Below, piece after piece: positions 28,771 to 53,999 of a stretch of 64,000 nucleotides of DNA (its first letter is position 1; the number at the start of each line of letters is the position of its first letter). The DNA is taken from IMG/VR virus record IMGVR_UViG_3300045974_000132, positions 62,001-126,000 of that record; one strand, given 5' to 3'. The notes under the pieces were generated by a model. It was given only the letters and a program-made list of their open reading frames with translations, made no database searches and was not told where the DNA came from. The translations under genes were made by a program, and so were the position numbers.

Positions 28771-30360
28771 TTAAATGTTAGAACCAGTAACGCGAACACC
28801 CGTTGCGTTAATGACTGCGGTAAATTGAACACGCTTTACTGGCAGAACAGGATCAAGCCAGAAGTCGATATAAAGATCACCTGCTGCGATACTCTCATTG
28901 GTGTTATTACTTTCATCACAAACAACACCGAAGTTGTACAAGCCGCGTGCGTTCTTAATAGGACGGAGCAAACGAGTACCTGCATCTTCAAGACGGCTAC
29001 GCAGTTGTTGATCGTTAGGATCGAACACGCTATACAACAGAACGTTCTCCATCGACTTCTCGATAAAGATCATTAGGCGACGTACGGACATGTTAGACAG
29101 TGAACTACCTATGATCTGGAGAGTATCAGCACCCCAAATCTTGATACCACTGCCTTCAATCAGACGAATTGAATTAACTTGCGACTCATACAGAGCATCG
29201 CGCTTACCTTGGTCATATACAACACGAACGCCATCTACCTTCAGATCGCCGCGTGTCATACCTGCTGGTGCAAACCAAAGTTCATAGTCACGATCGGTAC
29301 GTGCATAACAAGCAGCAACAAAGCCTGACGGTGGAACATACAAACGTATATCGTTGTACTGGTCACCGATCAGAAGATCACTAGAGTACAAAGCACTATA
29401 GGAACTATCAACTGCTAGGTCTGTACGACGATAAGCAATTGCATCTGTTACCTTTTGTTGATCGGAAGGAACATCCAAGATCGCAATACAATCCATCCGA
29501 GTACGGCATAGATCATCAATAGCTCGTTGGTAGTCAGTATCAGTAATGCCACCGTTGATGAACATGTTAATGTCAATCACTTCAGGATCTGCAAAGCTAT
29601 CCAGGGCTTGAATGAAGTCATACTTGTTCGGGCGAGCACCGTCAGCACCACCTACGATTGAGATACCTAATGAAGTAGCACTGCCACCTGCATCAAAAGT
29701 ATTAATCAATTGCTTCGCTGGCGTAGCAATCAGTTCAGCATTTTGGTGATTCTGAACGATTTGAATGTAGCTGGACTTACGGTTGATCTGTTGTTCAATA
29801 TTCAATTGAACACCGTAGCCGTCAACAACATAAGCTAAGTGACAACGCCATTTCTCAACAGGCTGTGAGCTACCTGTTACATAGACTTCAAGATAGAAGA
29901 AGCCTTGACCGAACTTCGTATCAGGATAGACACGAACGTAGAGTCGTGCATTCCAGTCACCCGGATTGATTGCATAGATTGCAAACAGGTCAGTAGGTGC
30001 AATAGAAATGTCGTCAGCCGTTGCTACACCTGAAGCAAACGGAAGTGACGTATTGAAGCTACCGTCAAAGCCGATGTTGCAACCACCGTATAGAGCATGA
30101 GGTGCAACACGTAGAGCGTACATGCGGTCGCCTTCAGACAAGAAAGCAACAGCAGAGTGACCCATGAAACCGATTGTAGCATCAGGCTTGCCGAAGATTG
30201 AAATGTACTCACTCTCAGAAGTTACTAGAGTAGGAATACCTACAGGGCCTTGATGCGCTTCACCTATCAATACAGCAATAGACGTTGTAGCAGCTACAGG
30301 TGTTTGGGAGAAGTCGCGTTCTTGAACATAAACGCCGGCACTGTTGTGAACATTACCCAT
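28771..30360 (-). CDS. tail sheath protein
   Basis: SAGVYVQERD, GPVG.PTLVTS, VPPSG, WFAPAG..RG, IWGADTL, SVRRL, VCDESNNT. Confidence 0.95.
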   Translation of the reverse strand: MGNVHNSAGVYVQERDFSQTPVAATTSIAVLIGEAHQGPVGIPTLVTSESEYISIFGKPDATIGFMGHSAVAFLSEGDRMYALRVAPHALYGGCNIGFDGSFNTSLPFASGVATADDISIAPTDLFAIYAINPGDWNARLYVRVYPDTKFGQGFFYLEVYVTGSSQPVEKWRCHLAYVVDGYGVQLNIEQQINRKSSYIQIVQNHQNAELIATPAKQLINTFDAGGSATSLGISIVGGADGARPNKYDFIQALDSFADPEVIDINMFINGGITDTDYQRAIDDLCRTRMDCIAILDVPSDQQKVTDAIAYRRTDLAVDSSYSALYSSDLLIGDQYNDIRLYVPPSGFVAACYARTDRDYELWFAPAGMTRGDLKVDGVRVVYDQGKRDALYESQVNSIRLIEGSGIKIWGADTLQIIGSSLSNMSVRRLMIFIEKSMENVLLYSVFDPNDQQLRSRLEDAGTRLLRPIKNARGLYNFGVVCDESNNTNESIAAGDLYIDFWLDPVLPVKRVQFTAVINATGVRVTGSNI

Positions 30361-31513: not shown

Positions 31514-32311
31514 TTACTGTTTCACCTTTACAGGGGAGCTTACGTCCAAGCCCTTCACGATCTTAATGCTTGAGAACGACACAGGTATGCGCTGCTCCCC
31601 CGGGACATCAGGGTCGGCTTCAACGTCTAGGTCTTCCTCGTCAGAAGAGTCTGATTCCGATTCAGTATCTTCGGCTGCTTGCGTAGAGCTATCTTCAGAA
31701 GCTGTAGCCTCCATAGATGCTGCAAGGATTCTACCAATCTGGTGCATAGAAGTAACACGACGACGAATAGGAGAAGGTTTGTGTTCAGAAGATTCCGACT
31801 CTAGGTCTTCTGCATCTGCGTCCTCGTCCTCTTCAGCCCATTCATCAGTGTCTTCATCGTCACTATCTGCGCCCTCTTCACCAGCTAGTTGCTGAAGGTT
31901 TTCAGTAGTGATAGGATTTTGACTATCTTGAAGATGGTCACTTACCGGTTCTAGCAAAGCGTTCGTCAACCGTTTAACATCACCGCATTCAGCAGCTTGT
32001 GCAAACAGAGCGCCCGCTTCTTCAAATTGTTTAGCAGCAAAGGCTTGCAGGGAAAGAGCTAAGAACTTCTTAGCCATAATAACATCTGCACTAACACTTG
32101 CTTCTAGGTTGAAGTTCTCAGAGGTGCCTTCACGCTTAGTGTCAATATCTTTAGTTACGTCCATATCTGTTTCCTTAGAACTATCGTCTGTTTCTTTGTT
32201 AGGGTCGATCACCTCAGGCGTTGCATCTGTGGCAATGTCCTTGTCTGTTGTCGTATCTTCGGAAGGAGTTTCAGGTTTGGTTGTATCTTTGTTGTCGTCA
32301 GTAATTGCCAT
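31514..32311 (-). CDS. highly acidic head-associated (core/scaffold-like) protein
   Basis: D/E/T-rich; contains EASVSA, ESESS and VSFSS motifs; follows the capsid gene. Confidence 0.55.
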   Translation of the reverse strand: MAITDDNKDTTKPETPSEDTTTDKDIATDATPEVIDPNKETDDSSKETDMDVTKDIDTKREGTSENFNLEASVSADVIMAKKFLALSLQAFAAKQFEEAGALFAQAAECGDVKRLTNALLEPVSDHLQDSQNPITTENLQQLAGEEGADSDDEDTDEWAEEDEDADAEDLESESSEHKPSPIRRRVTSMHQIGRILAASMEATASEDSSTQAAEDTESESDSSDEEDLDVEADPDVPGEQRIPVSFSSIKIVKGLDVSSPVKVKQ

Positions 32312-32317
32312 ATTATG

Positions 32318-33703
32318 TCACCCTACGTTAGCTTTAAACCATTTGACTATTTCCCGATGGGTGTAGTCATACCAATTTCTAGGAAGCTTGACTCGTGTGT
32401 TTCCACCGTCAAACACTAGCATTTGAAACTTATACCCTGCTACAATGCAAGCCTTTGCTTTCGCTCTAGTTCTATCCCATAATGTTTTGGGCTGAACATA
32501 GAAGAACTCATGACCTAAGCCTATAGTAGTAAGGCTTTTTACTTCGATCAATATATTCCTATCACGTATAAGCATGTCTGGATAGTAATAACACTTTTTA
32601 CGATTGAATGTATATAAGATAGAAGGTATAGTTCTATCAGAGTCTAATTCAATCGAATTAGGCTTTATAGAAGTGTTATTTAGTAGCCAGTGTATTGCAG
32701 CAGCTTCTTTCCCGCGTACTTTAAATTCGTATCCTCTATACTTGTATAAGTAGAAAGAACCTGAACTCGTAGGAGAACACCTTGGACACCGAAACAATTT
32801 TCGTCTTATATCAGAAGGAGTAGTTTCAAATTTAGCACCGCAGTCTAAATGCTTATACTTAATGCGTGTCTTAGAGTCTACATACCTACCTAACAATTTA
32901 AACTCTGGCTTTTTAAAGCTAAGTTCATCTTTGTATTCAGTATGTGTTTTAACCCTAGTGCCGAACTTATTAGGAAAGCAAGTCGGACATCTTAAATCGA
33001 AACTTCTATTCCAAGGTAGCTCAACTTTGTGCCTACAATCTATATGCTGTAGGGTAACCAAGTCAGACCCAGGCGTGTATTTAACGGGTGTCCAAACAGA
33101 GTTGCGCTCTGCGTGGATTGCTTTAAGATTTGTAAGTGTCTGTACAACCACCTTCTTATGCAAGCACTCACACTTAACACCGCCTCGGTATAGAGCGTAG
33201 TTGTCCGCTTCAAACTTAAGCCCACAATCATGTTTAAACGTTGATCTAGGATGACCAAATTTAACCATCTTATAGCCCGGACGTTTTGCTTTAAGTTGCT
33301 TACGAAATTCAACTTCTTTACTACCTAAATCTACTTTAGGCCCTGTTTTACTATAAGTGTTATCACGATATTTAGTGGAGCACTCGTGACAACAAAACCT
33401 ATCTTTGTATTGTTCAATAAAACCTTTACATGTTGGGCATAGATGCGGTTTAGTATCACTATTTATATAGTAGTACCAACGTTCTATACCTACATCAAAA
33501 GACTTAGGTAGGAAAGATGTTTGTACGTCTAAAAACTTTTTGAAACTAGGTTGAGTGTAAAGCTTTGTTATCTTCCTACGAAAATAGGAATGTATATCAT
33601 TGCCTGCTGGTTTATCAAATCCTAAATCAGAGGCAATAGCCAGCAATTGTTTTGAGTGCTTAGGTAGTTTATTTAATAGTGTTGTATTGGCACAGTTGGA
33701 CAT
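32318..33703 (-). mobile_element. homing endonuclease-like protein: Zn-ribbon repeats plus C-terminal PD-(D/E)XK domain
   Basis: H.DCG...CP.C repeats; YYPDMLI...IEVKS; AT-rich; directly downstream of the capsid gene. Confidence 0.75.
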
Positions 33704-33714
33704 AGTAGAACCTC

Positions 33715-33796
33715 TTTACTTGAAGTAAGAAAGGTGTGGGACACCTTTTGAGCATCCCACACTTCTTATACAAGTAAATTAGTATTTCTACTAATT
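33715..33796 (-). terminator. two hairpins after the capsid gene (terminator and/or RBS-control structure)
   Basis: AATTAGTA-GAAA-TACTAATT, then long stem TTTACTTG..AAGAAGTGTGGGA / TCCCACAC..TTCTT..CAAGTAAA. Confidence 0.6.
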
Positions 33797-33805
33797 ATTT
33801 ACTCG

Positions 33806-34903
33806 TCATATTCTCTTGCCCTTAGCAACAGAGCGCGAGTTAGCCAGCGTGAAGCTGAGAACTTCGCTCATGAGCCAGCCGCGAGCGGTAGAGCCGCTGT
33901 CAGCACCCGAAGTAGGTTCGCTACGAACACCACCACGATCACTGTACATAGCGTGATGTTCCGGGGTCGACAGAACGTAGATTTCGCCACGATTCAGGAC
34001 CTTCTGGTTCGGTTGGCGGAAGCCGTCCGTCAGAAGAGTCAGACCAACCAGAGTACCGAGTTCGCCGTTCAGGACCAAGTCATACTTGGTGACCGGATCA
34101 AGGAATGACGAGAAATCGTTGTTGCCGATAATGTCGTTCCAGTAATCGTTAGCGATGATCGCAGTGGTGGCCGGCAGGTTCCAGTCAGTGATGGCGGTAC
34201 GCAGATTGGCAAGCAATTGCGGCGTCAGTTGACCAGCGATGTAGTTAAGCGGATTGACAACGCCAACGGTCAAGTCAGCAGATTGCTTCCACAGCTTATC
34301 TTCCTTGACCATGATTGCGTCAAGACCCATGTTGTACAGGTTGTCAAGCGTGTCGCCGCCAACTTGTTCCATTTCGATACGATCAGCGCGCAGATTTGCC
34401 ACGACTTCAAATTCAGCCGGGTAGAACTGCTTGTTACGAATCATTTGGAACTGTACGTTTGCAGGGCCAGTAGCAACAACAGCCATTGCATCCCACATCG
34501 GGACGTTAACGCGCGGCAGTTCGCCTTGCTTCAGAGTCTGACCAACAGCAACGCGACGGAGGAAGCCTTCGCGGTTACGTTGTTCTTGAATCTGAACAGC
34601 CAGATCGGCGCCCAGAGCAGCCCACTTGACCGGATCAGCAGCAGCAGCGATCATAACTTCGCGGCGCTCTTGAGCCAGTTGCATTTGTTCTTCAGCAGAA
34701 GTAGATTGATGACGGATGTCACCCTTTTCCATTGCAGAGAACATGCCAGTAATGGCGCGAATCAGTTCTTTCTTGTCGTTTGCGTTGAACTCACCAGTCG
34801 AGGTCGACAGGAGACGTTCAGCAGTGCCAGGCATACGGAACTCAGTAACCGGGGCGCCGCTAGCAAGCACAACTTGGGAACCAGCGTACGGATTTGCTTT
34901 CAT
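33806..34903 (-). CDS. major capsid protein (HK97 fold, probable N-terminal propeptide)
   Basis: Size, position after scaffold and decoration genes, strong high-expression codon bias; REGFLRR, AIMVKED, GELGTLVG. Confidence 0.85.
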   Translation of the reverse strand: MKANPYAGSQVVLASGAPVTEFRMPGTAERLLSTSTGEFNANDKKELIRAITGMFSAMEKGDIRHQSTSAEEQMQLAQERREVMIAAAADPVKWAALGADLAVQIQEQRNREGFLRRVAVGQTLKQGELPRVNVPMWDAMAVVATGPANVQFQMIRNKQFYPAEFEVVANLRADRIEMEQVGGDTLDNLYNMGLDAIMVKEDKLWKQSADLTVGVVNPLNYIAGQLTPQLLANLRTAITDWNLPATTAIIANDYWNDIIGNNDFSSFLDPVTKYDLVLNGELGTLVGLTLLTDGFRQPNQKVLNRGEIYVLSTPEHHAMYSDRGGVRSEPTSGADSGSTARGWLMSEVLSFTLANSRSVAKGKRI

Positions 34904-34945
34904 AATGTAAAACTCCTATTGCTTGTAAGATGTACCGGCCTACGA

Positions 34946-35641
34946 TTAGCCGACGTTGATTTCAACAACCAGGAACGGCGAACCGGCTGAAGGGCTGTCC
35001 TTAACAGTCAAGCCCGGAATAGCCTTGTCTGAAGGGCCAGTAGACGGGCCAAGCTTACCACCAGCCAGGAGCTTTGCGAACAGGGCCGTAGACCAGTCCG
35101 CAGAAGCGTCGAAGAAGGAAGTAGCAACTTCCGCTTGCTTGATAGCAGCGATAGTGCCGAGAGCGTTTGCGGCCAGACCACCGTAAGGAGCATCACCGAT
35201 AACGGTACGAGCTTCTTGGACAGTAGGAGCATACAGGTATTGAGCATGGATAGCTTTGCCTGCATTGGAAGCATCAAGAACGTAGTTGGCGCCAACCAGA
35301 ACTACTTCACCAGCAGTCGGGGTACCCGAAGCGATGATAGCTAGAGCAACACCACCGACGGTGATCAGAGCTTGACCAGCGATAGGAGCGCGAGTAAGCG
35401 AACCTGTAGCTGAAGCATCGACGACGCCATCTTCAACCAGCGGCAGAGTAGCCGGTGGCATGTTACGAGCAAGTGCGAAACCTGCAAAGACTTCACCGGC
35501 AGCACCAGTGGAGGGTTGAACCTTGGTTGAACCGGCTTCTTTGACGAAAGCCAGAGCAATACCTTCTTCTTGAATAGCCACGCCGGTAGCGAGGTTTTCA
35601 AAAAGAGATTTAAAAATACGAGTATTCCGAAGTTGCAGCAT
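34946..35641 (-). CDS. capsid decoration / stabilising protein
   Basis: Ala/Gly/Val-rich, between scaffold and capsid genes, same codon bias. Confidence 0.6.
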   Translation of the reverse strand: MLQLRNTRIFKSLFENLATGVAIQEEGIALAFVKEAGSTKVQPSTGAAGEVFAGFALARNMPPATLPLVEDGVVDASATGSLTRAPIAGQALITVGGVALAIIASGTPTAGEVVLVGANYVLDASNAGKAIHAQYLYAPTVQEARTVIGDAPYGGLAANALGTIAAIKQAEVATSFFDASADWSTALFAKLLAGGKLGPSTGPSDKAIPGLTVKDSPSAGSPFLVVEINVG

Positions 35642-35666
35642 GGTTTAAACTCCTTGTTAATTACTC

Positions 35667-37574
35667 TTACCGAGCGCGACGGCCGAGAGAGGAAACAGCA
35701 CGATGGATTTTTTGCATACCTACAGTATCTTCAGTAGAGACAGACACCTCAGTATTTGCACCGGGCTTCTGCTCAGTCGAAACAGAAGTACCCATGCCTG
35801 CTAAACGGCTCTCGATGGAATCAGAAGGTTGTGCAGAAGAAACCGCCTGATAGTTTGTACCGAGAATAGTCTTTGCGAGGCTTTCTTGCACTTCAGAAGG
35901 CTTACTAACAATGTCATTTGCTTGAGCAAACAGCACTGAGTGATAAGCATCTGCGTGTGCCTTGAACGCATTGTCGATAACGACTTCCGGATTACGTACG
36001 CCGGCACTCGACATTGCATTCCAAAGAGCGGACTTGAGAGGATTCTGGACGCCAGCAAAGAAGCCACGGTTGATACCGATAGCAGCAGTTGCCATAGCAG
36101 CCATAAACTTCTCTTGATGGCCCTTAATTTCAGCAGAAAGAGCAGCACGTTGTTCGGAGACTTGCGAATCCACTAAACGGCGAACTTCCTTAGAGACAGA
36201 AACCTTATGCTTGATCGGAGCAAAGCCGAGTTCAGCAAGAGCCTTCTTGATACCCGAGACCTTAGCGGTTGCCAGAGCAGCATGACCGAAAGACGGAGTA
36301 TCGAAAATATCAGCATTCTTACCAGCAGTAGCAGCGCGTGCCATTGCAATAGGAACACCCTTGTGGTATGCAGTCCAAGCAGCACAACCAGCAACCGTAG
36401 AGCTATAGCTTACGTCGAGGTCATCAGCAGAGGCACTTTCATCCAAGTCAGAATCAGCCGCGATTTCTTCGGTATCTTCACCGAGTTCATCACCTTCATC
36501 TTCAGAGCTATCATCGAGAACTGACAAAGCATTACCCTCATCTTCTTCATCTTCAGAAGCGTCATCCGATTCATCATCGCCGGAAGTTGATTTATCTGCA
36601 TCGCTAGATTCAGCAGCAGCAGCGTCTTCCTCACCAGCATCTTCAGAACCTTCATCTTCTTCAGCAGCGCCTTCGTCTGTGCCTTCTTCAGCAGCAGCAT
36701 CGTCGCCTTCGCCTTCATCTTCAGTAGAAGCATCTTCAACGTTGTCACCAGGAACTTCACCGTCGCCCAGGTCTTCTGACTTAGAGACAGTAACCTTAGT
36801 AGCGACAGCTTCTTCAACCGGCTTTTCGCTGAGGTCGATTTCACCAGCAACATCTTCAGAAGGTTCTTGAACTTCGCTCAAGCAAATCGGGCACTCTGAA
36901 ACGTTCTTATCCGAAAGGATGTGAACACCGCAGCCAGCAGAACTACATACAACGTACTGGGTCTTAACCTTAGTACCGCTGGACATAGAAGACAGCTTTT
37001 TGTGGGCAGAGAAAACGCGCATAGCTTCCTTGAATGAAGAAGAAACAACTACTGAAGAGTCTTCGTCTTCGTCGTCTTCTGCATCATCTTCTTCCGAAGA
37101 ATCGTCATCTTCTTCCTCGTCATCTGATTCATCATCATCTGATTCGGAAGCAATGTCTTCATCTTCGTCGGTATCTACATCACCCAGGTCATCTTCATCT
37201 TCATCACCGTCACATTCAGTGGCTAGAGCAGAAGTGCACTGCGGGCAATACTTAACCAGGGATTCACTGTCAAACACAACGTGGGCACCGCAACCAGACG
37301 AGCAAACCAGGTGGTTCGCTTCGATGTCCGCGCTGGAATTAGAAGCGAATTCCAGGGTATCGAGAATTTGGTTATCAGTTTCCAGGTCCATGTCACCAGT
37401 GCTTGGATTGAACATCTGTTCAGCATGACTGGCATGTGTAACGAAGGCTAACTTCCCATCATTACTCACTTGTGCAACCGCGCCCTTGCCCATGGCGAGC
37501 AACCGATACTTATTAATAGCATCGGTTTTAGAACGGCCCACTGCCAGGATGCCGTGAAATTCAGCTTTAGGCAT
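35667..37574 (-). CDS. prohead scaffold/core protein, acidic, with two Zn-finger-like motifs
   Basis: Long D/E tracts; CSS.GCG.H...CP.C twice; probable start MPKAEF at 37574 with AGGAG RBS. Confidence 0.65.
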   Translation of the reverse strand: MPKAEFHGILAVGRSKTDAINKYRLLAMGKGAVAQVSNDGKLAFVTHASHAEQMFNPSTGDMDLETDNQILDTLEFASNSSADIEANHLVCSSGCGAHVVFDSESLVKYCPQCTSALATECDGDEDEDDLGDVDTDEDEDIASESDDDESDDEEEDDDSSEEDDAEDDEDEDSSVVVSSSFKEAMRVFSAHKKLSSMSSGTKVKTQYVVCSSAGCGVHILSDKNVSECPICLSEVQEPSEDVAGEIDLSEKPVEEAVATKVTVSKSEDLGDGEVPGDNVEDASTEDEGEGDDAAAEEGTDEGAAEEDEGSEDAGEEDAAAAESSDADKSTSGDDESDDASEDEEDEGNALSVLDDSSEDEGDELGEDTEEIAADSDLDESASADDLDVSYSSTVAGCAAWTAYHKGVPIAMARAATAGKNADIFDTPSFGHAALATAKVSGIKKALAELGFAPIKHKVSVSKEVRRLVDSQVSEQRAALSAEIKGHQEKFMAAMATAAIGINRGFFAGVQNPLKSALWNAMSSAGVRNPEVVIDNAFKAHADAYHSVLFAQANDIVSKPSEVQESLAKTILGTNYQAVSSAQPSDSIESRLAGMGTSVSTEQKPGANTEVSVSTEDTVGMQKIHRAVSSLGRRAR

Positions 37575-37690
37575 ACTTTTGGCTCCTGTTAATTGTTGAA
37601 ACGAACGTGCAATTTCAAACACGTACAAATAAATTATGGTATTCAGAAATTGCGCTAGACCTACAAAACCTACAAACTACCAATCTACTA

Positions 37691-38185
37691 CTAAAACTGC
37701 ATATCCCGCACCTTTAATCTATTAAAGGCAAGAACATGTTTTTCCCGGTGTACATATTGGGTACTATGGTGTGCCCATTGGTGCATCTTTTCATCAGGGA
37801 CATCTAGGTTTAACGCTATTGTCACATGAGGTACGTAATCCGGATATCTATGCTTTGCACCCCTTTGGAGAAACAAGGAATGAACATGCTTAAATATGGG
37901 TGAATCCAAGATAAATACAGCAATTCCTTTACCGTTTTGCTTCCAATACTCAACCCTAGCAATCTTAGTGAACACCGGCGCCTTAGGATACGGTATTCGG
38001 AGAGTGCGTAAAGCATTATCAGAGCATACAGCTGTTACATGAGAGGTATAAGGAACACTATGGGTTGCGAAAGGTGGATGGGTATACCATACCAGTCCTG
38101 TTAGTAAGTGAGTTGTCCGGTAGTCAGGCGTAAAATGTGCATACACTCCCTTTGTACCGGTATAGTGTTTTGTACATATACGCAT
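37691..38185 (-). CDS. acb1: 2H phosphoesterase, Acb1 / T4 gp57B-like (paralogue 1)
   Basis: GVYA, HVTAVCS, LDSP...H...GAKHRYPDYVPHVTIA: two HxT motifs with Acb1 spacing. Confidence 0.7.
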   Translation of the reverse strand: MRICTKHYTGTKGVYAHFTPDYRTTHLLTGLVWYTHPPFATHSVPYTSHVTAVCSDNALRTLRIPYPKAPVFTKIARVEYWKQNGKGIAVFILDSPIFKHVHSLFLQRGAKHRYPDYVPHVTIALNLDVPDEKMHQWAHHSTQYVHREKHVLAFNRLKVRDMQF

Positions 38186-38207
38186 GGTATCCCGATCTGA
38201 CGCCAAT

Positions 38208-38241
38208 AAAAAAAGGAGTATACCTTTCGATATACTCCTTC
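38208..38241 (-). terminator. rho-independent terminator
   Basis: AAGGAGTATA/TATACTCCTT stem, GAAA-containing loop, T7 tail. Confidence 0.85.
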
Positions 38242-38268
38242 TAAATTATGTTGCACAGATTTTGAGAA

Positions 38269-38664
38269 CTACCGATAGTTACTTCGGCGTCGATCATTCA
38301 CAATAGGACGGTCAGAAGCACGCCTATCTCTACCTACCTGTCGTTTATTCCGGCGGGTAGTAAACCGTTTAAATGCCCAAACAGCACCTAGAAGTAATAG
38401 AACTATTGTCCCAAAGAACATACATATAGGAGGCATAGGTGGGCAATCTTCATCATCAAAGGTTTTTATATATCCTTCAAATCCGAACATAGAATACCAA
38501 GGATACCTTAGCTTATCCGGGGGAACATAATGAGTACGTTTATTAGTACGCGGATCATAGTGGAGAACATGGGGCATACACCAATGCGAAGAACGCCTAA
38601 ATTCAACGTACCCACCTATCTCATTCCATTGATCTAAAGCATAATACAAACATTGAGTTGCCAT
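38269..38664 (-). CDS. hypothetical membrane protein with Arg-rich tail
   Basis: One TM segment (MFFGTIVLLLLGAVWAF), then RRASDR/DRRR tail. Confidence 0.6.
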   Translation of the reverse strand: MATQCLYYALDQWNEIGGYVEFRRSSHWCMPHVLHYDPRTNKRTHYVPPDKLRYPWYSMFGFEGYIKTFDDEDCPPMPPICMFFGTIVLLLLGAVWAFKRFTTRRNKRQVGRDRRASDRPIVNDRRRSNYR

Positions 38665-38673
38665 TTTAATCCT

Positions 38674-39810
38674 TTACAGCTTTCTAGGATCGAGCAAGTG
38701 TGGGCCAATAGCGGACACAAAAGCAGGCGTGTTAACAACCGAGCATTCAAAGCCCTTTGCATCATGGCACTTACGGAAAGCCAAACGTCCATCTGCTTGC
38801 TTATACGTAGGACGACCCATTTGGGTATGCTTGCAAGGGGATAAGTTAATACCCTTACCGACTACTTGGTTGCAGATAGAACACGAATACGAGGTATAGT
38901 AGAAGCCTACTGAATACGCATTCTGCTGACGGGTAAGGATTTGATCTACGAGTAAGCTATCCTTAGTACGGTCAAACGCCATAAGAAGAACAATCTTGTA
39001 GTAATTCGGATTGAACTTAATAGGACGTAAGAATGACTCAAGAATTACACCCTTGGCTTTCAACAGATTCTTGTTGTCGTGTTCCTGGTGGGTAGGCTGA
39101 CCCTTGAAGGTCTTGTACATCTGCATACCGTATTCAGGTTTGAACGACAGCATTTCCCTCAGTGAAAGTGAATCACCGTTGGTGTTGGGTAATCCGCTGA
39201 AGATTGCAGGTATAGGGACAAGAATATAATCCCTAATATCGCGGCTAATATCGTAATGCTCCGCAGCATACGGAAGCCAGTAGTTGCAATCGAGGATACG
39301 CTCAGAGTGCCCAGTGCCAGAAATCTGGGCCGAAAGTGGTAGTTCATTTGTGCCTTGTGCTAGTTTATCTAATGGTATGGGATTAAGGCCTAAACCAAAG
39401 CTTTGACTCAGCATCCCTGTAGAGGAACTAGCTAAAGCCAGTTTGTCTAAACTCCTACATAATGAAGTATCAATCCCACCTTTAATAGCGTTAGGATTTT
39501 GACCATCACTAAGAAGAGGATATCCTGTACCTGGGTTACCTGCGCCTAAGTAGGGCACGCTGGGATCATAATGCCCATGCGGTACATCAGCATTAGGATT
39601 GATAGGTTCTTCTGAGCCAATCTCACCAACATCTTCAGGATTGGCTACTTGGTCAAGTTGCTTGAACTCAAAGTAGTCACCAATTTGGGTAAGAACACCG
39701 ACAGGATTACCTTGGAAAGCAACAGTCGTAAACTTGGAATTACTTTGCGGCATTAAAGAGTAACTATTACTCTTTGCCCACGTATGCGGGTCTTGAATTT
39801 GAACAGTCAT
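38674..39810 (-). CDS. prohead maturation protease (HK97/assemblin-type fold)
   Basis: PNTNGD, THQEHD (His), KGVI, YSVG (Ser), CSIC/C.H zinc insert, FECSVVNTPA. Confidence 0.7.
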   Translation of the reverse strand: MTVQIQDPHTWAKSNSYSLMPQSNSKFTTVAFQGNPVGVLTQIGDYFEFKQLDQVANPEDVGEIGSEEPINPNADVPHGHYDPSVPYLGAGNPGTGYPLLSDGQNPNAIKGGIDTSLCRSLDKLALASSSTGMLSQSFGLGLNPIPLDKLAQGTNELPLSAQISGTGHSERILDCNYWLPYAAEHYDISRDIRDYILVPIPAIFSGLPNTNGDSLSLREMLSFKPEYGMQMYKTFKGQPTHQEHDNKNLLKAKGVILESFLRPIKFNPNYYKIVLLMAFDRTKDSLLVDQILTRQQNAYSVGFYYTSYSCSICNQVVGKGINLSPCKHTQMGRPTYKQADGRLAFRKCHDAKGFECSVVNTPAFVSAIGPHLLDPRKL

Positions 39811-40135: not shown

Positions 40136-41761
40136 TTAAATCTTAGGTATCCACTTCGGAACACGCAAGCCTAGGTTGTCAAAGAACTCTTTGAGAACGT
40201 TCGGTGAGATATACGCATTGATTGCAGTCATACCTGTAAGCTTCTGATTCTCACCGCTACCTACACGGTGATGAAGCATTTCGCCTACTTGCTTCATTTC
40301 CTCTTTAATCCATTTCTCAACACTGGCTTGACTAGGATGTTCAGACTTCTTGAAAGGCGCGCCGCTAAGAATCTTCAACGCGAGTTTAGTACCAGCTAAG
40401 TGGCGGAACTTATGAATCGTGATACCTGTAGGAACACCCAGGCTCTTCAGATACGCATTGACAGGAGCTGCACCTAGAGGCTTACTACGATTGGTGAACA
40501 CAACGTCAGTCGGCTTCTTACCCTTGATAAGTTCCCTGATGATTGCAATCACCTTACGGTTTGTTGCAGTCGTACCTAGTAAGATGTGATGCTGCTCAGT
40601 ACCCTTCTTACCAGTGTATTTGAATTCAAAGCCCTTGCTGATAGGAAGTAACTGCTTTACCAACAGCGTACTCATACCGTAACGATCTTCGCCTTCCATG
40701 TTCTTGCTATCACCGCCGATACGAGCTTGGGTTTGATAGATTGCTTCAACCAGAGCAGCAAGCACTTGGGTACGCGTATCAAGCGAGTCAAGATCCTTCA
40801 CCCACTTAGTACGGAACTTATCAACTTCCTTCATGAAGGAAGAGACTTTATCAAATCGTGCAGCTTTATTGCCTGAAGTAAATGCAACGGTACGAAGACG
40901 CTGTGCGACATTACCTACTAATGAACAAACATAGGTATTATCAGTCAAAGGGTCATACTTCGGGTTCATCTTCACTTCGCCGATAAGCATACCTGCAATT
41001 TGCTTGCCTGCTGTCGTGTATAAGCGGCCTTGTTCGTCAATGCTCCCTATAAAGCCTCTAGGGATGTAATTGCAACCTAAGGTATCTAGGTATTTACGAA
41101 CAATCTTAACGTCGATAAACGGCTTACCTGACGACCGGATGAACTTGAATAGATACTTCTTATAGTTGGCTACGAAGACTTTACGCAGTTCACTATAGCG
41201 TTCAACCAGTTTAACCTTACCCGGAAGCTCACGGAAGTCACGCATTTCATTGAGAGTCAGAATAGGATCATTCCGACGCCCAGTGAGTTGCAGTACCAAC
41301 TTAATCATTCCGCCTTCAGTAGCTTTATCACCTACTGCTGCTTCAACCTCTTCATCATCTGGAACGAAGTTTGTTGCAAGCTTTGAATCACCGGTGACTG
41401 CATAGATATTACGCGTGATGCGATTCCAGGCAGGCTCACTATCCTTACGATAGTACAGAAGGCAATCTTTAATCATCGCCAACTGTTCTTGGGAGATAGA
41501 AGTATCTGCTTGGAAATCAGCAACAGCTTCTTTCAGCCGGGCACTTGCATCTGCACCATCGTTCACCGTAAACTCCATGCGTGAGCGAATGAAGTTGTTG
41601 GTGATAGTAGTGAAGTCACGCAAGATTCCGAACTTCTTCAGAAAGGGTTGTGAAGCACTCACCCATTGCGTGAATTGAGCCTTTAGCGGCAACACATCTT
41701 TTTCTGTAAGGCTGAGAGCCATAACAGCCAAGCATTTAGTAAAGTTAATAACTGGATTCAT
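40136..41761 (-). CDS. DNA topoisomerase IB
   Basis: ARIG (Arg), YGMSTL, YTGKKG (Lys), VNAYLK, HKFRH (Arg), AINAYI (catalytic Tyr). Confidence 0.85.
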   Translation of the reverse strand: MNPVINFTKCLAVMALSLTEKDVLPLKAQFTQWVSASQPFLKKFGILRDFTTITNNFIRSRMEFTVNDGADASARLKEAVADFQADTSISQEQLAMIKDCLLYYRKDSEPAWNRITRNIYAVTGDSKLATNFVPDDEEVEAAVGDKATEGGMIKLVLQLTGRRNDPILTLNEMRDFRELPGKVKLVERYSELRKVFVANYKKYLFKFIRSSGKPFIDVKIVRKYLDTLGCNYIPRGFIGSIDEQGRLYTTAGKQIAGMLIGEVKMNPKYDPLTDNTYVCSLVGNVAQRLRTVAFTSGNKAARFDKVSSFMKEVDKFRTKWVKDLDSLDTRTQVLAALVEAIYQTQARIGGDSKNMEGEDRYGMSTLLVKQLLPISKGFEFKYTGKKGTEQHHILLGTTATNRKVIAIIRELIKGKKPTDVVFTNRSKPLGAAPVNAYLKSLGVPTGITIHKFRHLAGTKLALKILSGAPFKKSEHPSQASVEKWIKEEMKQVGEMLHHRVGSGENQKLTGMTAINAYISPNVLKEFFDNLGLRVPKWIPKI

Positions 41762-41815
41762 TTGTATCACCGGTATTTGTTATAAGCGTAGAGTGTGTAT
41801 AAATGCTCTTTACAC

Positions 41816-52143: not shown

Positions 52144-53999
52144 TTCATACCCTTCTTGTTCAAGTTCTTAATTGCCTTGATGATAGTTTCGTTAGCTTTA
52201 GACTCAAAGGTATTACGATTTACCACATGCTTACGCTTACCTGTCTTGGTAAAAGCATAGGGTTCATGGCCTGTAAAGTCACGATCTAACAATGGGCGAG
52301 CTCCATTAGCCCCTAATACAGCAGACCTAGAGCCAGCCCTAACAGGAGAAGCTAATGCAAGTAACGCACGTTCTGCGGATTCAGACTCTTCTCCGCCTTC
52401 ACCACCAGCAGGAGCAGGATTTAGAGCAGTAATCTTCTTCATGTATTCCGAGATACGCTTACGAATATCTAGGTCTTCATCTTGCTGACGGATGAGTGTT
52501 TCAAGATCAAGCCCACCTGCAGCAGCCAATGCGCGTAACGGAACTGGAACACCCTTCTGTGTCAAGGAATCAAGCATGTCGATATATGCAGTATCACCTT
52601 CAGCCTTAAGTTGCTTAGTCCAATGCACAGAAGGAATAAACAACTTACTACCGTCATTCATTTGCATCAAGGCTTGTTCACTATCAACCTGATTCATCAG
52701 ATTCGGATTGATATTGACGCGACCGTTCTTAACAGTGAAGCCGTTGATTAGCGAAATCAGTGGGAAGAGGGTATCATAGAACAACTTCCGAGTCATAGTC
52801 TCACGGAAGCTACGAATCATATCAAGGAATACTGTGATAGCATTACCTGAAGTGTCGTAGTTTGCGTCACCGGATAAGAAGCCTTCTGATATACCTAGAC
52901 CGCGCAGCTTATGGCTTAATACGCTATCTGCAAAGTCTGTTGACTTCCAGAAGTCACCACCCTGACGTAATTCTTCAACCATCACACCTGAGCGTGTTGC
53001 AATGATAGCACCGATCGGGTCACTATCTGCATTCATAAACAACTCAGTCATGAATTCCATATCTTGTACAGAAGGAATCCATTGATCGCCGTCACCCAAA
53101 GACAAGTGAAGAATGCCTCGTTGGCGTCTAGCTGATTCAACTAGAGTACCGCGGAAGAGATTCTTTTCAATCAAATAAATGGGCAAAATCCGACGGAAGT
53201 ACGAAGTACCTCGGTCAGATCGAGAGAATGTTCTACGTGGGACATAGATGGTGCTTAAAGGATCAAGCTCGATAGACCCTTCAAGGATCTTGTCGATAAT
53301 CTCATGCCCTAAATGTTCTTTGATCCGTTTGATTCTAGGCGTATCTCTACCTAGGATTTCTTTCAATTGATCTGGGAACTTAACTGTGATAATGGGCTGT
53401 TGACTATAGAACGGAAGTGATTCAACGGTCAAGTCATCAGCTTGGTGAGGAAGAATATCCGTAAAGATTTTCTTCTCACGATTATACAGTAGGGAGCTAC
53501 AATGCTCACCTAATACCAGATAATCTACAGCAATCTCTGGAATCAATGTACGGAAGTTCAACCGTTCAATTGTCTCCAGATATATCTCACTGATCTTTTT
53601 GGTGTCACCTTTAACAGACGGAAAACCGCCTAGGTTGAACTCACCAAAAGGTAGCATAGACATTAAGTCAACAGCAGAACCTGCGACGCTATCATTGTAG
53701 TAAATATCCCTATATACGCTATGTAGTACCGACTCCGTCTGAGGAGTCATACCTGTTAGCATAGGATCTACGTCGATAGTGATTGCATTACCCGATATGT
53801 TCGTATTCGGACTACCGGTTACGCGCATTGACGTATTTGAAGTTGATTCAAATCCTTTAGAGATAGGCTTAGTCCCTACTCTCGTACCAGATTTTGAGGT
53901 AGTGCCTAAGTTTCTTTTTAAGTCAATTGGTTCTGTTTTTGTAGTTTGTTGACGGACAGCCTGGATTGCAGGATGCCCGCTTTTAGACACTTTAAACAT
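52140..53999 (-). CDS. portal protein
   Basis: Position downstream of terminase; IYYNDSVAGSAVD, RGTSYFRRIL, LGISEGFLSGDANY. Confidence 0.8.
   Translation of the reverse strand: MFKVSKSGHPAIQAVRQQTTKTEPIDLKRNLGTTSKSGTRVGTKPISKGFESTSNTSMRVTGSPNTNISGNAITIDVDPMLTGMTPQTESVLHSVYRDIYYNDSVAGSAVDLMSMLPFGEFNLGGFPSVKGDTKKISEIYLETIERLNFRTLIPEIAVDYLVLGEHCSSLLYNREKKIFTDILPHQADDLTVESLPFYSQQPIITVKFPDQLKEILGRDTPRIKRIKEHLGHEIIDKILEGSIELDPLSTIYVPRRTFSRSDRGTSYFRRILPIYLIEKNLFRGTLVESARRQRGILHLSLGDGDQWIPSVQDMEFMTELFMNADSDPIGAIIATRSGVMVEELRQGGDFWKSTDFADSVLSHKLRGLGISEGFLSGDANYDTSGNAITVFLDMIRSFRETMTRKLFYDTLFPLISLINGFTVKNGRVNINPNLMNQVDSEQALMQMNDGSKLFIPSVHWTKQLKAEGDTAYIDMLDSLTQKGVPVPLRALAAAGGLDLETLIRQQDEDLDIRKRISEYMKKITALNPAPAGGEGGEESESAERALLALASPVRAGSRSAVLGANGARPLLDRDFTGHEPYAFTKTGKRKHVVNRNTFESKANETIIKAIKNLNKKGMK

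What the first reader, a model, noticed from the sequence alone, without database searches (positions are those of the whole stretch)
31514..39810. The same S-x-S signature recurs inside head proteins: possible novel prohead-protease specificity
Seen: scaffold has VTVSKS, KVSVSKE, EVSVSTE and IASESD; the acidic 31514 protein has EASVSA, ESESS and VSFSS; the capsid protein has LLSTST and HQSTSAEE within its first ~70 aa; the protease has LASSST just before its catalytic domain. Outside this span, portal has KVSKS, FESTSN and ESESAE, the 54011 protein has FESTSA, and 50385 has a second KISIS that would remove its acidic tail. Inference: the protease may cleave after S-x-S rather than after Glu (T4/phiKZ) or Lys (HK97). 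These proteins are Ser-rich, so some matches will be chance.
Basis: inference. Interest (0 to 1): 0.65.

Follow-up and report, generated by a model that had tools for sequence, protein, structure and literature searches.

The report
Head-protease cut sites, jumbo phage
In the head-gene block of a 286-kb Lu11/PaBG-like jumbo phage, some of the recurring Ser-x-Ser strings sit in conserved motifs that probably mark where the capsid-maturation protease cuts after small residues, as in phage G, but only protein sequencing can tell this from the usual cut after glutamate.

Summary
The window is part of a 286,393-bp jumbo phage related to Pseudomonas phages Lu11, PaBG and HRDY3. As raw counts they barely exceed chance. 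Some are ordinary: KISIS is part of an N-terminal leader shared by 11 proteins.

Four sites are conserved in relatives:
- h-h-S-x-S-F-G-h just before the protease catalytic domain
- G-T-S-V-S-S in the scaffold tail
- P-x-S-F-S in the acidic protein
- [A/S]-L-G-[A/S] in the capsid protein

The protease has the T4 gp21 / herpes assemblin fold, carries a zinc-ribbon insert, and is homologous to phage G gp19. The published mature length of the phage G capsid protein, combined with its sequence, places its cut at A-L-A|Q. That is after neither Glu nor Lys, and it aligns with the invariant A-L-G|A here.

My best reading (about 0.45) is cleavage after small-x-small.

The main rival (about 0.25) is the phiKZ-type [S/A]-x-Glu cut. 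At the capsid propeptide junction (residues 65-72) Glu is better conserved than the first Ser, and five sites read S-V/T-S-x-E/D. PaBG's roughly 20% mass loss fits a cut near residue 70.

No residue-level data exist for this lineage.

The parts
38674..39810 (-). Prohead (head maturation) protease, 378 aa. It has an N-terminal beta domain (residues 1-53), a disordered linker (54-130) and a catalytic domain (about 134-370).
   Evidence: phrog_18299 matches at E 5.5e-82. AF2 model has mean pLDDT 78.9, with pLDDT below 50 over residues 54-130. T4 gp21 (5jbl) matches at Z 9.8, rmsd 2.8, 140 aligned residues; VZV protease at Z 7.7. hhalign to phage G gp19 gives 98.9% probability, E 2e-17.
39391..39414 (-). 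Conserved M-L-S-Q-S-F-G-L (protease residues 133-140). Candidate autocleavage or pseudo-substrate segment, S-x-S|F.
   Evidence: S135 is Ser in 43/55, S137 in 46/55 and F138 is Phe in 45/55 homologues. Lu11 and HRDY3 have A-L-G-F here. Phage G gp19 has K-S-N-S-L-G-L at similar spacing from the catalytic core. The structural alignment starts at model residue 138 = gp21 residue 12. gp21 self-cleaves nine N-terminal residues that block its active site (PMC9958956).
38827..39081 (-). Catalytic core: invariant His244 and Ser300, with a Cys310/Cys313/Cys326/His328 zinc-ribbon insert. Invariant Glu355, the candidate third triad residue, lies just beyond at 38746-38748.
   Evidence: Invariant columns of the 55-sequence alignment A2. 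The same residues and the same CSIC...C.H insert align in phage G gp19. Their roles are inferred, not shown.
35667..37628 (-). Scaffold-like acidic protein, 653 aa. It has two N-terminal domains each with a CxxC...CPxC knuckle, long acidic low-complexity stretches, a conserved C-terminal domain and a basic tail (SLGRRAR).
   Evidence: phrog_20988 match at E 2.7e-74. Position between protease and MCP is conserved in 16 relatives. Alignments. The scaffold role is inferred.
35769..35792 (-). G-T-S-V-S-T-E-Q (scaffold residues 613-620), the end of the conserved block R-L-x-x-h-G-T-S-V-S-S. Candidate cut site that would free the basic C-terminal tail.
   Evidence: The G column is invariant in 73/73. 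S-x-S is present in 51/65 tail linkers against 26.6 +/- 3.3 in shuffles. [SA]-x-E is present in 27/65 against 30.0.
35727..35750 (-). E-V-S-V-S-T-E-D (scaffold residues 627-634), a second S-V-S-T-E copy 14 residues after the first.
   Evidence: It lies in the variable tail and is not conserved in homologues.
36183..36206 (-). K-V-S-V-S-K-E-V (scaffold residues 475-482).
   Evidence: V-S-[VI]-S is kept in the closer half of 73 homologues, with E at +2 in only about a third. More distant homologues show an alternating h-p-h-p pattern, typical of a beta strand.
33806..34903 (-). Major capsid protein, 365 aa, HK97 fold with an N-terminal propeptide.
   Evidence: phrog_2522 match at E 4e-100. 54-58% identity to HRDY3, Lu11 and PaBG MCPs. 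The alignment profile matches phage G gp27 (6wkk) at E 7e-15. HK97-fold structural matches reach Z 12-13.
34685..34711 (-). MCP residues 65-73, H-Q-S-T-S-A-E-E-Q. This is the junction between the conserved N-terminal region and the first N-arm helix. Candidate cuts are S69|A70 (small-x-small) or E71|E72 / E72|Q73 (Glu reading).
   Evidence: The model helix starts at residue 70. Fold matches that include the N-arm start at residues 69-75. PaBG MCP loses about 20% of its mass (PMC7412058), which equals a cut at PaBG residues 71-75.
34781..34813 (-). MCP residues 31-41, L-L-S-T-S-T-G-E-F-N-A. Invariant G37, E38, N40, A41.
   Evidence: S33 is S or D, and S35 is S/A/R/K. G-E-[FI]-N-A is present in all 80 distinct versions of this segment. 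Function unknown.
34607..34624 (-). MCP residues 94-99, W-A-A-L-G-A, the position homologous to the phage G gp27 maturation site A-L-A|Q.
   Evidence: HMM alignment, gp27 sequence. [AS]-L-G-[AS] is present in 117/121 homologues, with L97 in 119/121 and G98 in 120/121.
31514..32311 (-). Acidic protein, 265 aa. It has a variable N-terminal extension, a conserved helical domain from about residue 80, acidic stretches, and a conserved C-terminal P-V-S-F-S-S followed by a basic end (VKVKQ). Probably a second core or scaffold protein.
   Evidence: A gene in the same position, immediately or one gene after the MCP gene, is found in most of the relatives examined; BLAST similarity is detected only in L004-L008. 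The role is inferred.
32081..32104 (-). E-A-S-V-S-A-D-V (acidic protein residues 70-77), at the boundary between the N-terminal extension and the conserved domain.
   Evidence: Short orthologues start 4-5 residues downstream. L004 has I-E-S-S-E-V at the same place.
31568..31588 (-). I-P-V-S-F-S-S (acidic protein residues 242-248).
   Evidence: Orthologues read PVSFSS, PASFST, HASFSN, PASFSS, PSALSS and QSSLSS.
34946..35641 (-). Virion structural (possibly decoration) protein, 231 aa, orthologue of PaBG gp81.
   Evidence: phrog_16710 match at E 1.7e-63. PaBG gp81 is a virion protein seen in several gel bands (PMC7412058). The alignment shows no conserved S-x-S.
53835..53855 (-).
   Evidence: Aligned orthologues read GFEATA (PaBG), RLEALA (NCTB), SFRSTS (JA11) and KEAAA (Lu11). 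The pattern is small-x-small with a preceding Glu in 4 of 6.

Best explanation
The span is the head-morphogenesis block of a Lu11/PaBG-like jumbo phage. It encodes a serine prohead protease, a large acidic scaffold-like protein, a virion (decoration-like) protein, an HK97-fold capsid protein with an N-terminal propeptide, an inserted homing endonuclease, and a second acidic core protein.

The protease has the T4 gp21 / herpes assemblin fold, carries a zinc-ribbon insert, and is homologous to phage G gp19.

The most likely mechanism is that the protease cuts extended, disordered segments after a small residue (Ser, Ala or Gly) that has a second small residue two positions before it. In this phage that motif is mostly written S-x-S, often with Val/Leu/Thr before or between the serines.

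Likely substrates:
- its own N-terminal linker (S135-Q-S137|F138), which would release or activate the catalytic domain
- the capsid propeptide (S67-T-S69|A70 and/or A96-L-G98|A99, perhaps also S33-T-S35|T36)
- the scaffold tail (S615-V-S617|T)
- the two ends of the acidic protein

What is shown: gene identities, protease fold, homology to phage G gp19, conservation of the motifs, and the phage G cut at A-L-A|Q. What is inferred: that these motifs are cleavage sites and where the scissile bond lies.
For: 1. **Phage G cut site.** Phage G MCP gp27 matures from 282 to 255 aa and from 31.2 to 28.2 kDa by N-terminal sequencing (PMC5646251). With the gp27 sequence, only a cut after Ala27 gives 255 aa (28,170 Da): G-R-V-A-L-A|Q-A-M. 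There is no Glu or Lys from P4 to P4'.
2. **The site aligns with an invariant tripeptide here.** The profile alignment (E 7e-15) puts that A-L-A|Q on the window MCP's A96-L97-G98|A99. [AS]-L-G-[AS] occurs in 117/121 homologues.
3. **The protease is homologous to phage G gp19.** hhalign gives 98.9% probability, E 2e-17, with the same His, Ser, Glu and CxxC...CxH insert. After its own family, gp19 is the best BFVD match, at E 1e-11.
4. **A conserved segment where gp21 has its plug.** h-h-S-x-S-F-G-h at residues 133-140 is the most conserved element outside the catalytic core: S135 43/55, S137 46/55, F138 45/55. Lu11 and HRDY3 replace S-x-S by A-L-G. gp19 has S-N-S-L-G-L. The structural alignment to T4 gp21 begins at residue 138 = gp21 residue 12 (Z 9.8). 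gp21 is held inactive by nine N-terminal residues that it cleaves off (PMC9958956).
5. **Scaffold tail.** S-x-S is present in 51/65 against 26.6 +/- 3.3 in shuffles, while [SA]-x-E is not enriched (27/65 vs 30.0).
6. **Other sites.** The acidic protein C-terminus conserves P-x-S-F-S. The portal site varies S-T-S / A-T-A / A-L-A.
7. **PaBG mass loss.** PaBG MCP loses about 20% of its mass (PMC7412058), which fits a cut at A-P-S71|A (19%).
Against: - No mature N-terminus is known for any member of the Lu11/PaBG lineage. Every site here is inferred.
- At the MCP junction the acidic residue is better conserved than the small-x-small pair. S-x-E occurs in 94/113 against 39.5 +/- 4.8 in shuffles. 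S-x-S occurs in 47/113 against 34.5, and [SA]-x-[SA] in 97/112 against 80.5.
- In the Erwinia, Dickeya and Yersinia relatives the aligned column is still E or D.
- G37-E38 is invariant while S33 and S35 are not.
- The phage-G-homologous cut at G98 would remove 26-27% of the mass, not the roughly 20% reported for PaBG.
- Small-x-small is a loose pattern in Ser/Ala-rich linkers. Its conservation in the protease, scaffold and acidic protein could be structural (beta strands).
- The gp21-plug analogy rests on an alignment range, not on residue-level superposition.
Confidence: 0.45

Rival explanations
1. The protease cuts after Glu (or Asp) in a [S/A/T]-x-[E/D] motif with a hydrophobic or Thr residue at P4, like T4 gp21 ([L/I]-x-E) and the phiKZ, 201phi2-1 and SPN3US proteases ([S/A/G]-x-E). 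On this reading the reader's second Ser is the P3 residue and the first Ser is incidental. The MCP would be cut after E71 or E72, and perhaps after E38.
For:
- S-[VT]-S-[KTA]-[ED] occurs 5 times against 0.07 expected.
- At the MCP junction, S-x-E occurs in 94/113 against 39.5 +/- 4.8 and [SA]-x-E in 106/113 against 65.9. Clades lacking the first Ser keep T-S-A-E-R or T-A-A-E-K.
- 15 of 17 orthologues, including distant ones, have E or D in the aligned column.
- G-E38 is invariant.
- The SPN3US cleavage logo is A-x-E with Val preferred at P4 and Ser at P1' (PMC10052503), the same shape as x-V-S-x-E.
- A cut at PaBG A-R-E74 gives a 20% mass loss, as reported.
- T4 gp21 is the best solved-structure match (Z 9.8).
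Against: - The closest characterised relative, phage G, cuts at A-L-A|Q although L-E-T-E-E lies just upstream.
- In BFVD the next matches after phage G gp19 are HK97-type (COG3740) proteases. No match named as T4 gp21 or a phiKZ gp175 homologue is among the top 50, although many rows carry no name. No Pfam U9 or S80 hit was found.
- The scaffold tail shows no [SA]-x-E enrichment, and some homologues have no Glu there at all.
- The conserved protease segment S-x-S-F has no acid.
- The conserved [S/T]-x-x-E at the MCP junction may be an N-cap for the helix that starts at residue 70.
Confidence: 0.25
2. There is no common cleavage signature. The S-x-S strings are a by-product of Ser-rich disordered linkers, amphipathic beta strands (V-S-V-S, I-S-I-S, V-S-F-S) and helix caps. 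The protease recognises something else, or relies mainly on accessibility.
For: - Counts are not significant in the scaffold, acidic protein and portal.
- Genome-wide S-x-S is only 1.13 times expectation.
- KISIS at the N-terminus of the 50385 protein belongs to a leader M-[EKN]-h-h-h-S-h-S found in 11 proteins, at least one of them predicted to be non-structural (SprT-like, KMPT-N).
- VSVSKE at 475 decays to an h-p-h-p pattern in distant homologues.
- VTVSKS, IASESD, ESESS and EVSVSTE lie in unalignable low-complexity sequence.
Against: - Conservation is site-specific. Protease S135, S137 and F138 are conserved, with a match of the same form (S-N-S-L-G-L) at similar spacing in phage G gp19.
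- The scaffold G-T-S-V-S-S block gives 51/65 against 26.6.
- The pentapeptide recurs 5 times against 0.07 expected.
- The substitutions are small-for-small: S-x-S to A-L-G, and S-T-S to A-T-A.
Confidence: 0.2

Closest known systems
Bacillus phage G: protease gp19 and major capsid protein gp27
   Same: - gp19 aligns over the catalytic core (hhalign 98.9%, E 2e-17) with the same His, Ser, Glu and zinc-ribbon insert.
- gp27 is the only PDB sequence relative of the MCP (6wkk, E 7e-15).
- gp27 is cut at A-L-A|Q, which aligns with the invariant A-L-G|A here.
- gp19 carries S-N-S-L-G-L upstream of its core.
   Different: - Phage G MCP has only a 27-aa propeptide. The window MCP has about 70 more N-terminal residues with their own invariant motifs.
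- Identity is low (22% for the protease in BFVD).
- Phage G lacks the 53-aa N-terminal domain of the window protease.
- The cut-site motif of phage G has not, to my knowledge, been discussed as such.
T4 gp21 prohead protease (PDB 5JBL)
   Same: - Best solved-structure match (Z 9.8, rmsd 2.8, 140/165 residues).
- It is a Ser protease of the assemblin fold.
- An N-terminal segment plugs the active site and is self-cleaved (PMC9958956). That segment corresponds in position to the conserved S-x-S-F here.
   Different: - 10% identity, and no Pfam or HMM match.
- T4 cuts after Glu in [L/I]-x-E.
- T4 has no zinc ribbon, no long N-terminal linker and no extra N-terminal domain.
phiKZ gp175 / SPN3US gp245 (MEROPS S80) and their [S/A/G]-x-E motif
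   Same: - These are jumbo-phage prohead proteases of the same fold superfamily.
- They make multiple cuts in propeptides and core proteins.
- The SPN3US logo, V(P4)-A(P3)-x-E(P1) (PMC10052503), resembles x-V-S-x-E seen five times here.
   Different: - No match named as one of them appears among the top 50 BFVD matches, though many rows are unnamed.
- They autocleave at the C-terminus. The window protease has no C-terminal extension.
- Glu is not conserved at the scaffold and protease motifs here.
Herpesvirus assemblin (VZV, HCMV and KSHV proteases)
   Same: - Same fold (Z 7.7, 6.0 and 4.8).
- From established knowledge, they cut after a small residue: (V/L/I)-x-A|S. That is the kind of specificity proposed here.
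   Different: - Their catalytic triad is Ser-His-His, whereas His-Ser-Glu is the candidate here.
- Their P3 residue is hydrophobic rather than small.
- They belong to eukaryotic viruses, with no detectable sequence similarity.
HK97 gp4-type (S78 / COG3740) prohead proteases
   Same: Many BFVD matches at E 1e-7 to 1e-5 are annotated as prohead serine protease or COG3740. The partner capsid protein is of HK97 gp5 type.
   Different: HK97 cuts gp5 after Lys103 (established knowledge). There was no Pfam S78 hit. HK97 gp4 has no zinc ribbon.

Membership tests
Assemblin-fold prohead serine proteases (T4 gp21 / HK97 gp4 / herpes protease superfamily) | The characteristic beta-barrel assemblin fold | tested here: met
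   The AF2 model has pLDDT above 85 over most of the catalytic domain. 5jbl_A matches at Z 9.8, rmsd 2.8, 140 aligned; 1vzv at Z 7.7; 8j3s at Z 6.0.
Assemblin-fold prohead serine proteases (T4 gp21 / HK97 gp4 / herpes protease superfamily) | Invariant catalytic His and Ser about 55 residues apart, plus a third residue (Asp, Glu or His) | tested here: inconclusive
   H244, S300 and E355 are invariant in 55 homologues and align in phage G gp19. Equivalence to the gp21 triad was not checked residue by residue, because no coordinates were available.
T4 gp21 (Pfam Peptidase_U9) / phiKZ gp175 (MEROPS S80) sequence families | Match to the family profile | tested here: not met
   No Pfam-A family matched at E <= 0.01. 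None of the named rows among the top 50 BFVD matches is T4 gp21 or a phiKZ gp175 homologue; many rows carry no name. Only PHROG 18299, 'head maturation protease', matches.
T4 gp21 / phiKZ-type proteases | Cleavage C-terminal to Glu in a short x-x-E motif | not testable with these tools
   Sequence conservation is ambiguous. Glu is conserved at the MCP junction but not in the scaffold tail or the protease N-terminal motif.
Phage G gp19-like zinc-ribbon prohead proteases (informal group: G, PaBG, Lu11, phiRSL1 and relatives) | Sequence homology of the catalytic core, including the CxxC...CxH insert after the catalytic Ser | tested here: met
   hhalign gives 98.9% probability, E 2e-17, over 142 columns. 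BFVD matches are PaBG at E 9e-34, phiRSL1 at 2e-21 and phage G gp19 at 1e-11.
Phage G gp19-like zinc-ribbon prohead proteases | Substrate capsid protein cut after a small residue (A-L-A|Q in phage G) | tested here: inconclusive
   The homologous tripeptide [AS]-L-G is conserved in 117/121 homologues, but cleavage there is not shown. PaBG's roughly 20% mass loss fits residues 71-75 better than residue 101.
HK97-fold major capsid proteins with a cleaved N-terminal propeptide | HK97 fold | tested here: met
   Z 12-13.4 to many phage MCPs and to HK97 itself. The model is of moderate quality (mean pLDDT 66).
HK97-fold major capsid proteins with a cleaved N-terminal propeptide | Proteolytic removal of the N-terminal region on maturation | not testable with these tools
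   The only evidence is from a relative: PaBG MCP loses about 20% of its mass (PMC7412058).
   S-x-S occurs in 47/113 junction linkers. Whole clades read Q-T-S-A-E-R or T-A-A-E-K. At site 1, S33 becomes D and S35 becomes R/K/A.

The most novel reading that the evidence does not exclude
A clade of jumbo-phage prohead proteases carries a zinc ribbon after the catalytic Ser. It includes phage G gp19, PaBG, Lu11, phiRSL1 and many uncultured relatives. The proposal is that these enzymes cut after small residues in a small-x-small motif, as herpesvirus assemblins do, rather than after Glu or Lys. The proposal also holds that a conserved S-x-S-F pseudo-substrate segment in front of the catalytic domain keeps the enzyme in check until it cleaves that segment itself.
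Probability: 0.4. Interest if true: 0.55.

Novelty: new variant of a known kind. Interest (0 to 1): 0.42.

Why it matters
Prohead proteases decide which head proteins stay in the virion and in what form. A known cut-site rule lets one predict mature capsid, portal and core proteins from sequence alone. That helps in fitting cryo-EM maps and reading virion proteomes.

For jumbo phages the only established rules are Glu-specific (T4, phiKZ, SPN3US). A second rule, small-x-small, would apply to a large and mostly uncultured lineage: more than 280 capsid homologues were found in the protein database. It would show that P1 specificity drifted within the assemblin fold toward the herpesvirus type. 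It would also give a concrete activation model for these enzymes, in which a self-cleaved S-x-S-F segment plugs the active site.

If the Glu rule holds instead, the finding is an ordinary new member of a known kind.

Tried and rejected
- **Genome-wide triplet and pentamer enrichment**. S-h-S-x-E is not among the top patterns. Repeats such as P-h-G-x-T dominate, so the test lacks power.
- **Other proteins of the genome carrying S-[VL]-S-A-E** (G000 179883-180644, 270473-271645, 276564-278577, 284896-285330). PHROG searches gave no function, so I cannot say whether they are head proteins.
- **Idea that the protease N-terminal 125 residues are a fused copy of the small ORF upstream of the protease in Lu11, PaBG or JA11.** BLAST found no similarity. 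Rejected.
- **PDB sequence search with the protease.** Only chance hits.
- **Foldseek against the PDB.** Nothing at E <= 0.001. VIA-align was needed instead.
- **Gibbs motif search in the MCP linker.** It locked onto the upstream [VI]-V-P block and was not informative.
- **Literature search for residue-level cleavage data in Lu11, PaBG, Y3 or phiRSL1**. Only PaBG's 'about 20%' was found. The phiRSL1 structure paper is not held.
- **Decoration-like protein alignment**. No conserved S-x-S and no clear site.
- **Complex prediction, read laying and the look-up of sequencing runs were not used.** A docking score would not locate the scissile bond, and reads say nothing about protein processing.
- **My own mid-session conclusion that the motif is simply phiKZ-like S-x-E.** I downgraded it to a rival after obtaining the phage G cut site and the scaffold statistics.

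Full report
**What the region is.**
The window is G000:C1:62001-126000 of a single 286,393-bp contig with 43.7% G+C. All head genes lie on the minus strand.

PHROG and Pfam scans name the following genes:

| Coordinates | Product |
|---|---|
| 38674-39810 | head maturation protease |
| 33806-34903 | major head protein |
| 34946-35641 | virion structural protein |
| 52140-53999 | portal |
| 28771-30360 | tail sheath |
| 32318-33703 | HNH/DUF7487 endonuclease |

The capsid protein is 54-58% identical to those of Pseudomonas phages HRDY3, Lu11 and PaBG. It is 45-53% identical to those of phage NCTB and of the Dickeya, Erwinia and Yersinia jumbo phages. No phage record matches at the DNA level.

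The gene order is protease, scaffold-like protein, virion protein, MCP, small acidic protein, sheath. This order is kept in the cultured and metagenomic relatives I fetched, except that in PaBG the protease lies elsewhere in the genome.

**Check of the observation.**
As bare counts, S-x-S exceeds composition shuffles only nominally.

| Protein | Observed | Expected | P |
|---|---|---|---|
| MCP | 4 | 1.0 | 0.011 |
| Protease | 8 | 2.65 | 0.003 |

The scaffold, acidic protein and portal show no excess. Genome-wide the pattern is 1.13 times expectation.

A longer pattern that I defined after seeing the data, S-[VT]-S-[KTA]-[ED], occurs five times in scaffold, acidic protein and MCP. Expectation is 0.07. 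The copies use different codons, so this is not a recent duplication.

**The enzyme.**
An AlphaFold model built on 55 homologues has mean pLDDT 78.9. It shows three parts:
- a confident 53-residue N-terminal beta domain
- a disordered linker (residues 54-130)
- a catalytic domain

A Foldseek-independent search of PDB representatives puts T4 gp21 first (5jbl, Z 9.8, rmsd 2.8, 140 of 165 residues, model residues 138-361). Herpesvirus proteases follow (VZV Z 7.7, HCMV 6.0, KSHV 4.8).

H244, S300 and E355 are invariant in the family. So is a Cys/Cys/Cys/His cluster that forms an insert after the catalytic Ser.

Among predicted viral structures the best matches are PaBG and phiRSL1, then phage G gp19 (E 1e-11), then HK97-type proteases annotated COG3740. 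No match named as T4 gp21 or a phiKZ gp175 homologue appears in the top 50, though many rows are unnamed.

A profile comparison with phage G gp19 gives 98.9% probability and E 2e-17. It aligns the His, the Ser, the zinc-ribbon insert and the Glu. Pfam gives no hit.

The enzyme is therefore an assemblin-fold serine protease of a phage-G-like subgroup. It is not a member of the T4 or phiKZ sequence families.

**The capsid protein.**
Its alignment profile matches only phage G gp27 in the PDB (E 7e-15). The model, of moderate quality, has the HK97 fold (Z 12-13). Matches that include the N-arm begin at residues 69-75, and a helix is predicted from residue 70.

PaBG's capsid protein is reported to lose about 20% of its mass on maturation (PMC7412058). 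In PaBG that corresponds to a cut at residues 71-75. So some cleavage near residue 70 of the window protein is likely.

**Conservation tests.**

*MCP, 120 homologues.*
- At site 1 (residues 31-41) the invariant residues are G37, E38, N40 and A41. S33 is often Asp, and S35 is often Arg, Lys or Ala.
- At the junction (residues 60-79), presence of each pattern compared with within-linker shuffles:

| Pattern | Linkers with pattern | Shuffle mean |
|---|---|---|
| S-x-E | 94/113 | 39.5 +/- 4.8 |
| [SA]-x-E | 106/113 | 65.9 |
| S-x-S | 47/113 | 34.5 |
| [SA]-x-[SA] | 97/112 | 80.5 |

- Whole clades read R-H-Q-T-S-A-E-R or T-A-A-E-K, without the first Ser.
- Distant relatives keep an acid in the aligned column: T-K-D, L-S-E, T-P-E.
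- Taken alone, this favours a phiKZ-like [S/A]-x-Glu site. SPN3US gp245 prefers Val at P4, Ala at P3 and Glu at P1 (PMC10052503), which resembles x-V-S-x-E.

*Other proteins point the other way.*
- **Scaffold, 73 homologues.** The block R-L-x-x-h-G-T-S-V-S-S is conserved. S-x-S is present in 51/65 tail linkers against 26.6 +/- 3.3 in shuffles. [SA]-x-E is at chance (27/65 against 30.0), and some homologues have no Glu in the tail at all.
- **Protease.** The most conserved element outside the core is h-h-S-x-S-F-G-h at residues 133-140 (S135 43/55, S137 46/55, F138 45/55). It is present even in 245-aa homologues, where it lies at the extreme N-terminus. Lu11 and HRDY3 replace it with A-L-G-F.
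- **Acidic protein.** It conserves P-x-S-F-S some 20 residues before a basic C-terminus.
- **Portal.** The site varies S-T-S, A-T-A, A-L-A.
- What is conserved in these places is a pair of small residues two apart. Neither Ser specifically nor Glu is conserved there.

**The experimental anchor.**
Hua et al. list phage G gp27 as 282 residues and 31.2 kDa, maturing to 255 residues and 28.2 kDa. They mark this as based on N-terminal sequencing (PMC5646251).

The gp27 sequence from NC_023719 has 282 residues and 31,190 Da. Only a cut after Ala27 leaves 255 residues (28,170 Da). The site is G-R-V-A-L-A|Q-A-M. It follows neither Glu nor Lys, although L-E-T-E-E lies just upstream.

In the profile alignment this A-L-A|Q falls on the window MCP's A96-L97-G98|A99. 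[AS]-L-G-[AS] is present in 117 of 121 homologues.

Phage G gp19 also carries K-S-N-S-L-G-L at about the same distance upstream of its core as S-Q-S-F-G-L here. K-S-N-S-L recurs near the C-terminus of phage G gp21.

**The gp21 analogy.**
In T4, nine N-terminal residues of gp21 block the catalytic centre and are removed by self-cleavage (PMC9958956). The structural alignment of the window protease to gp21 starts at model residue 138 = gp21 residue 12. The conserved S-x-S|F boundary therefore lies within about two residues of the equivalent of the gp21 self-cleavage point. A segment sitting in the cleft should mirror the enzyme's specificity. I could not inspect coordinates, so this step is inference.

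**Weighing the readings.**
- **Small-x-small, about 0.45.** It has the only residue-level datum in the superfamily. It explains the protease, scaffold, acidic-protein and portal motifs.
- **[S/A]-x-Glu, about 0.25.** It explains the MCP junction best and has precedent in more distant jumbo phages. The conserved [S/T]-x-x-E there could also be an N-cap of the helix starting at residue 70.
- **No common signature, about 0.2.**

The two specific readings predict MCP N-termini only 2-3 residues apart (A70 against E72 or Q73). The phage G homology adds a third candidate, A99. That would mean a 26-27% mass loss, more than reported for PaBG.

**Strings that are ordinary.**
- KISIS at the start of the 50385 protein belongs to an N-terminal leader, M-[EKN]-h-h-h-S-h-S. 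It is found at the start of 11 of 396 predicted proteins and only twice elsewhere in 84,843 positions. It is conserved at the protein level and not at the codon level. Carriers include an SprT-like protein with a weak KMPT-N match.
- VSVSKE at 475 lies in an alternating hydrophobic/polar run, which I read as a beta strand, that fades in distant homologues.
- VTVSKS, IASESD, ESESS and the second SVSTE lie in unalignable acidic low-complexity sequence.
- The flagged LASSST of the protease is not conserved. Its neighbour LSQSF is.

**Verdict.**
- The strict S-x-S rule is not supported.
- A wider rule of cutting after small residues is the best-supported reading and would be a new variant among phage prohead proteases.
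- The conventional Glu rule is not excluded.
- No residue-level protein data exist for this lineage in the material I could search.

Noticed in passing
window 1105-2037, 16948-17265, 44823-45344, 45346-46578, 46588-46992, 50385-51086, 51580-52143 (all minus strand); further copies elsewhere in G000: Eleven of 396 predicted proteins begin with M-[EKN]-h-h-h-S-h-S (MELYISIS, MELLISVS, MKILLSLS, MNILISVS and similar). The same heptapeptide pattern occurs only twice elsewhere in 84,843 positions. Codons differ between copies, so the conservation is at the protein level. Relatives L007 and L009 also have MKILISLS starts. Function unknown; it could be a shared first beta strand, a targeting leader or an N-terminal signal.
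   Followed up: partly
window 38827-38883 (-), protease residues 310-328: A Cys310/Cys313/Cys326/His328 cluster forms an insert after the catalytic Ser. It is nearly invariant in the family and is shared with phage G gp19. It is absent from T4 gp21.
   Followed up: partly
window 39652-39810 (-), protease residues 1-53: A confidently folded small beta domain (pLDDT above 93) is joined to the catalytic domain by a disordered linker of about 75 residues. It is present only in the closer clade (homologues of 310-378 aa) and absent from the 245-aa forms. The weak fold matches (Z under 4, KA1- or AMPK-like) are not convincing.
   Followed up: partly
window 32318-33703 (-): A 461-aa HNH/DUF7487 endonuclease gene lies between the capsid gene and the acidic-protein gene. 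The closest relative (L004) has no gene there. L007 has a 445-aa DUF7487 gene at the same spot. A related 395-aa ORF lies at 56481-57668, and an ORF at 27897-28622 has an N-terminal sequence that looks GIY-YIG-like to me (not scanned). These are probably mobile homing endonucleases.
   Followed up: partly
window 35667-37628 (-), scaffold residues about 20-135 and 190-260: The scaffold-like protein has two copies of an N-terminal module, each ending in a C-x(2-4)-C ... C-P-x-C knuckle. PHROG labels the family 'ATPase', but I saw no evidence for that. One homologue is labelled 'rubrerythrin' by its source database.
   Followed up: no
window 31514-31570 and 35667-35720 (-): Both the acidic protein and the scaffold end in a short basic motif (SPVKVKQ and SLGRRAR). 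The motif is conserved in relatives and may be a capsid-binding anchor.
   Followed up: no
window about 54011-54208 (-): A 66-aa ORF between the portal and terminase genes shares FESTS with the portal N-terminal region and contains CPKC...CEPC. I did not check whether it is conserved in relatives.
   Followed up: no
window 40136-41770 and 42045-43940 (-): Upstream of the protease lie a 544-aa ORF in the position where relatives carry a Topoisom_I gene and a 631-aa ORF where relatives carry a multi-PAS-domain gene. The domain hits were seen on the neighbouring genes in relatives (L004-L008), and a PAS-domain protein is an unusual item in a phage morphogenesis neighbourhood.
   Followed up: no
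G000:C1:277825-278577 (outside the window): A 250-aa protein carries two S-V-S-x-E copies 14 residues apart (ESVSAE and ISVSDE). This is the same spacing as the two SVSTE copies in the scaffold tail. It also starts with the MYILIST leader. No PHROG match.
   Followed up: partly
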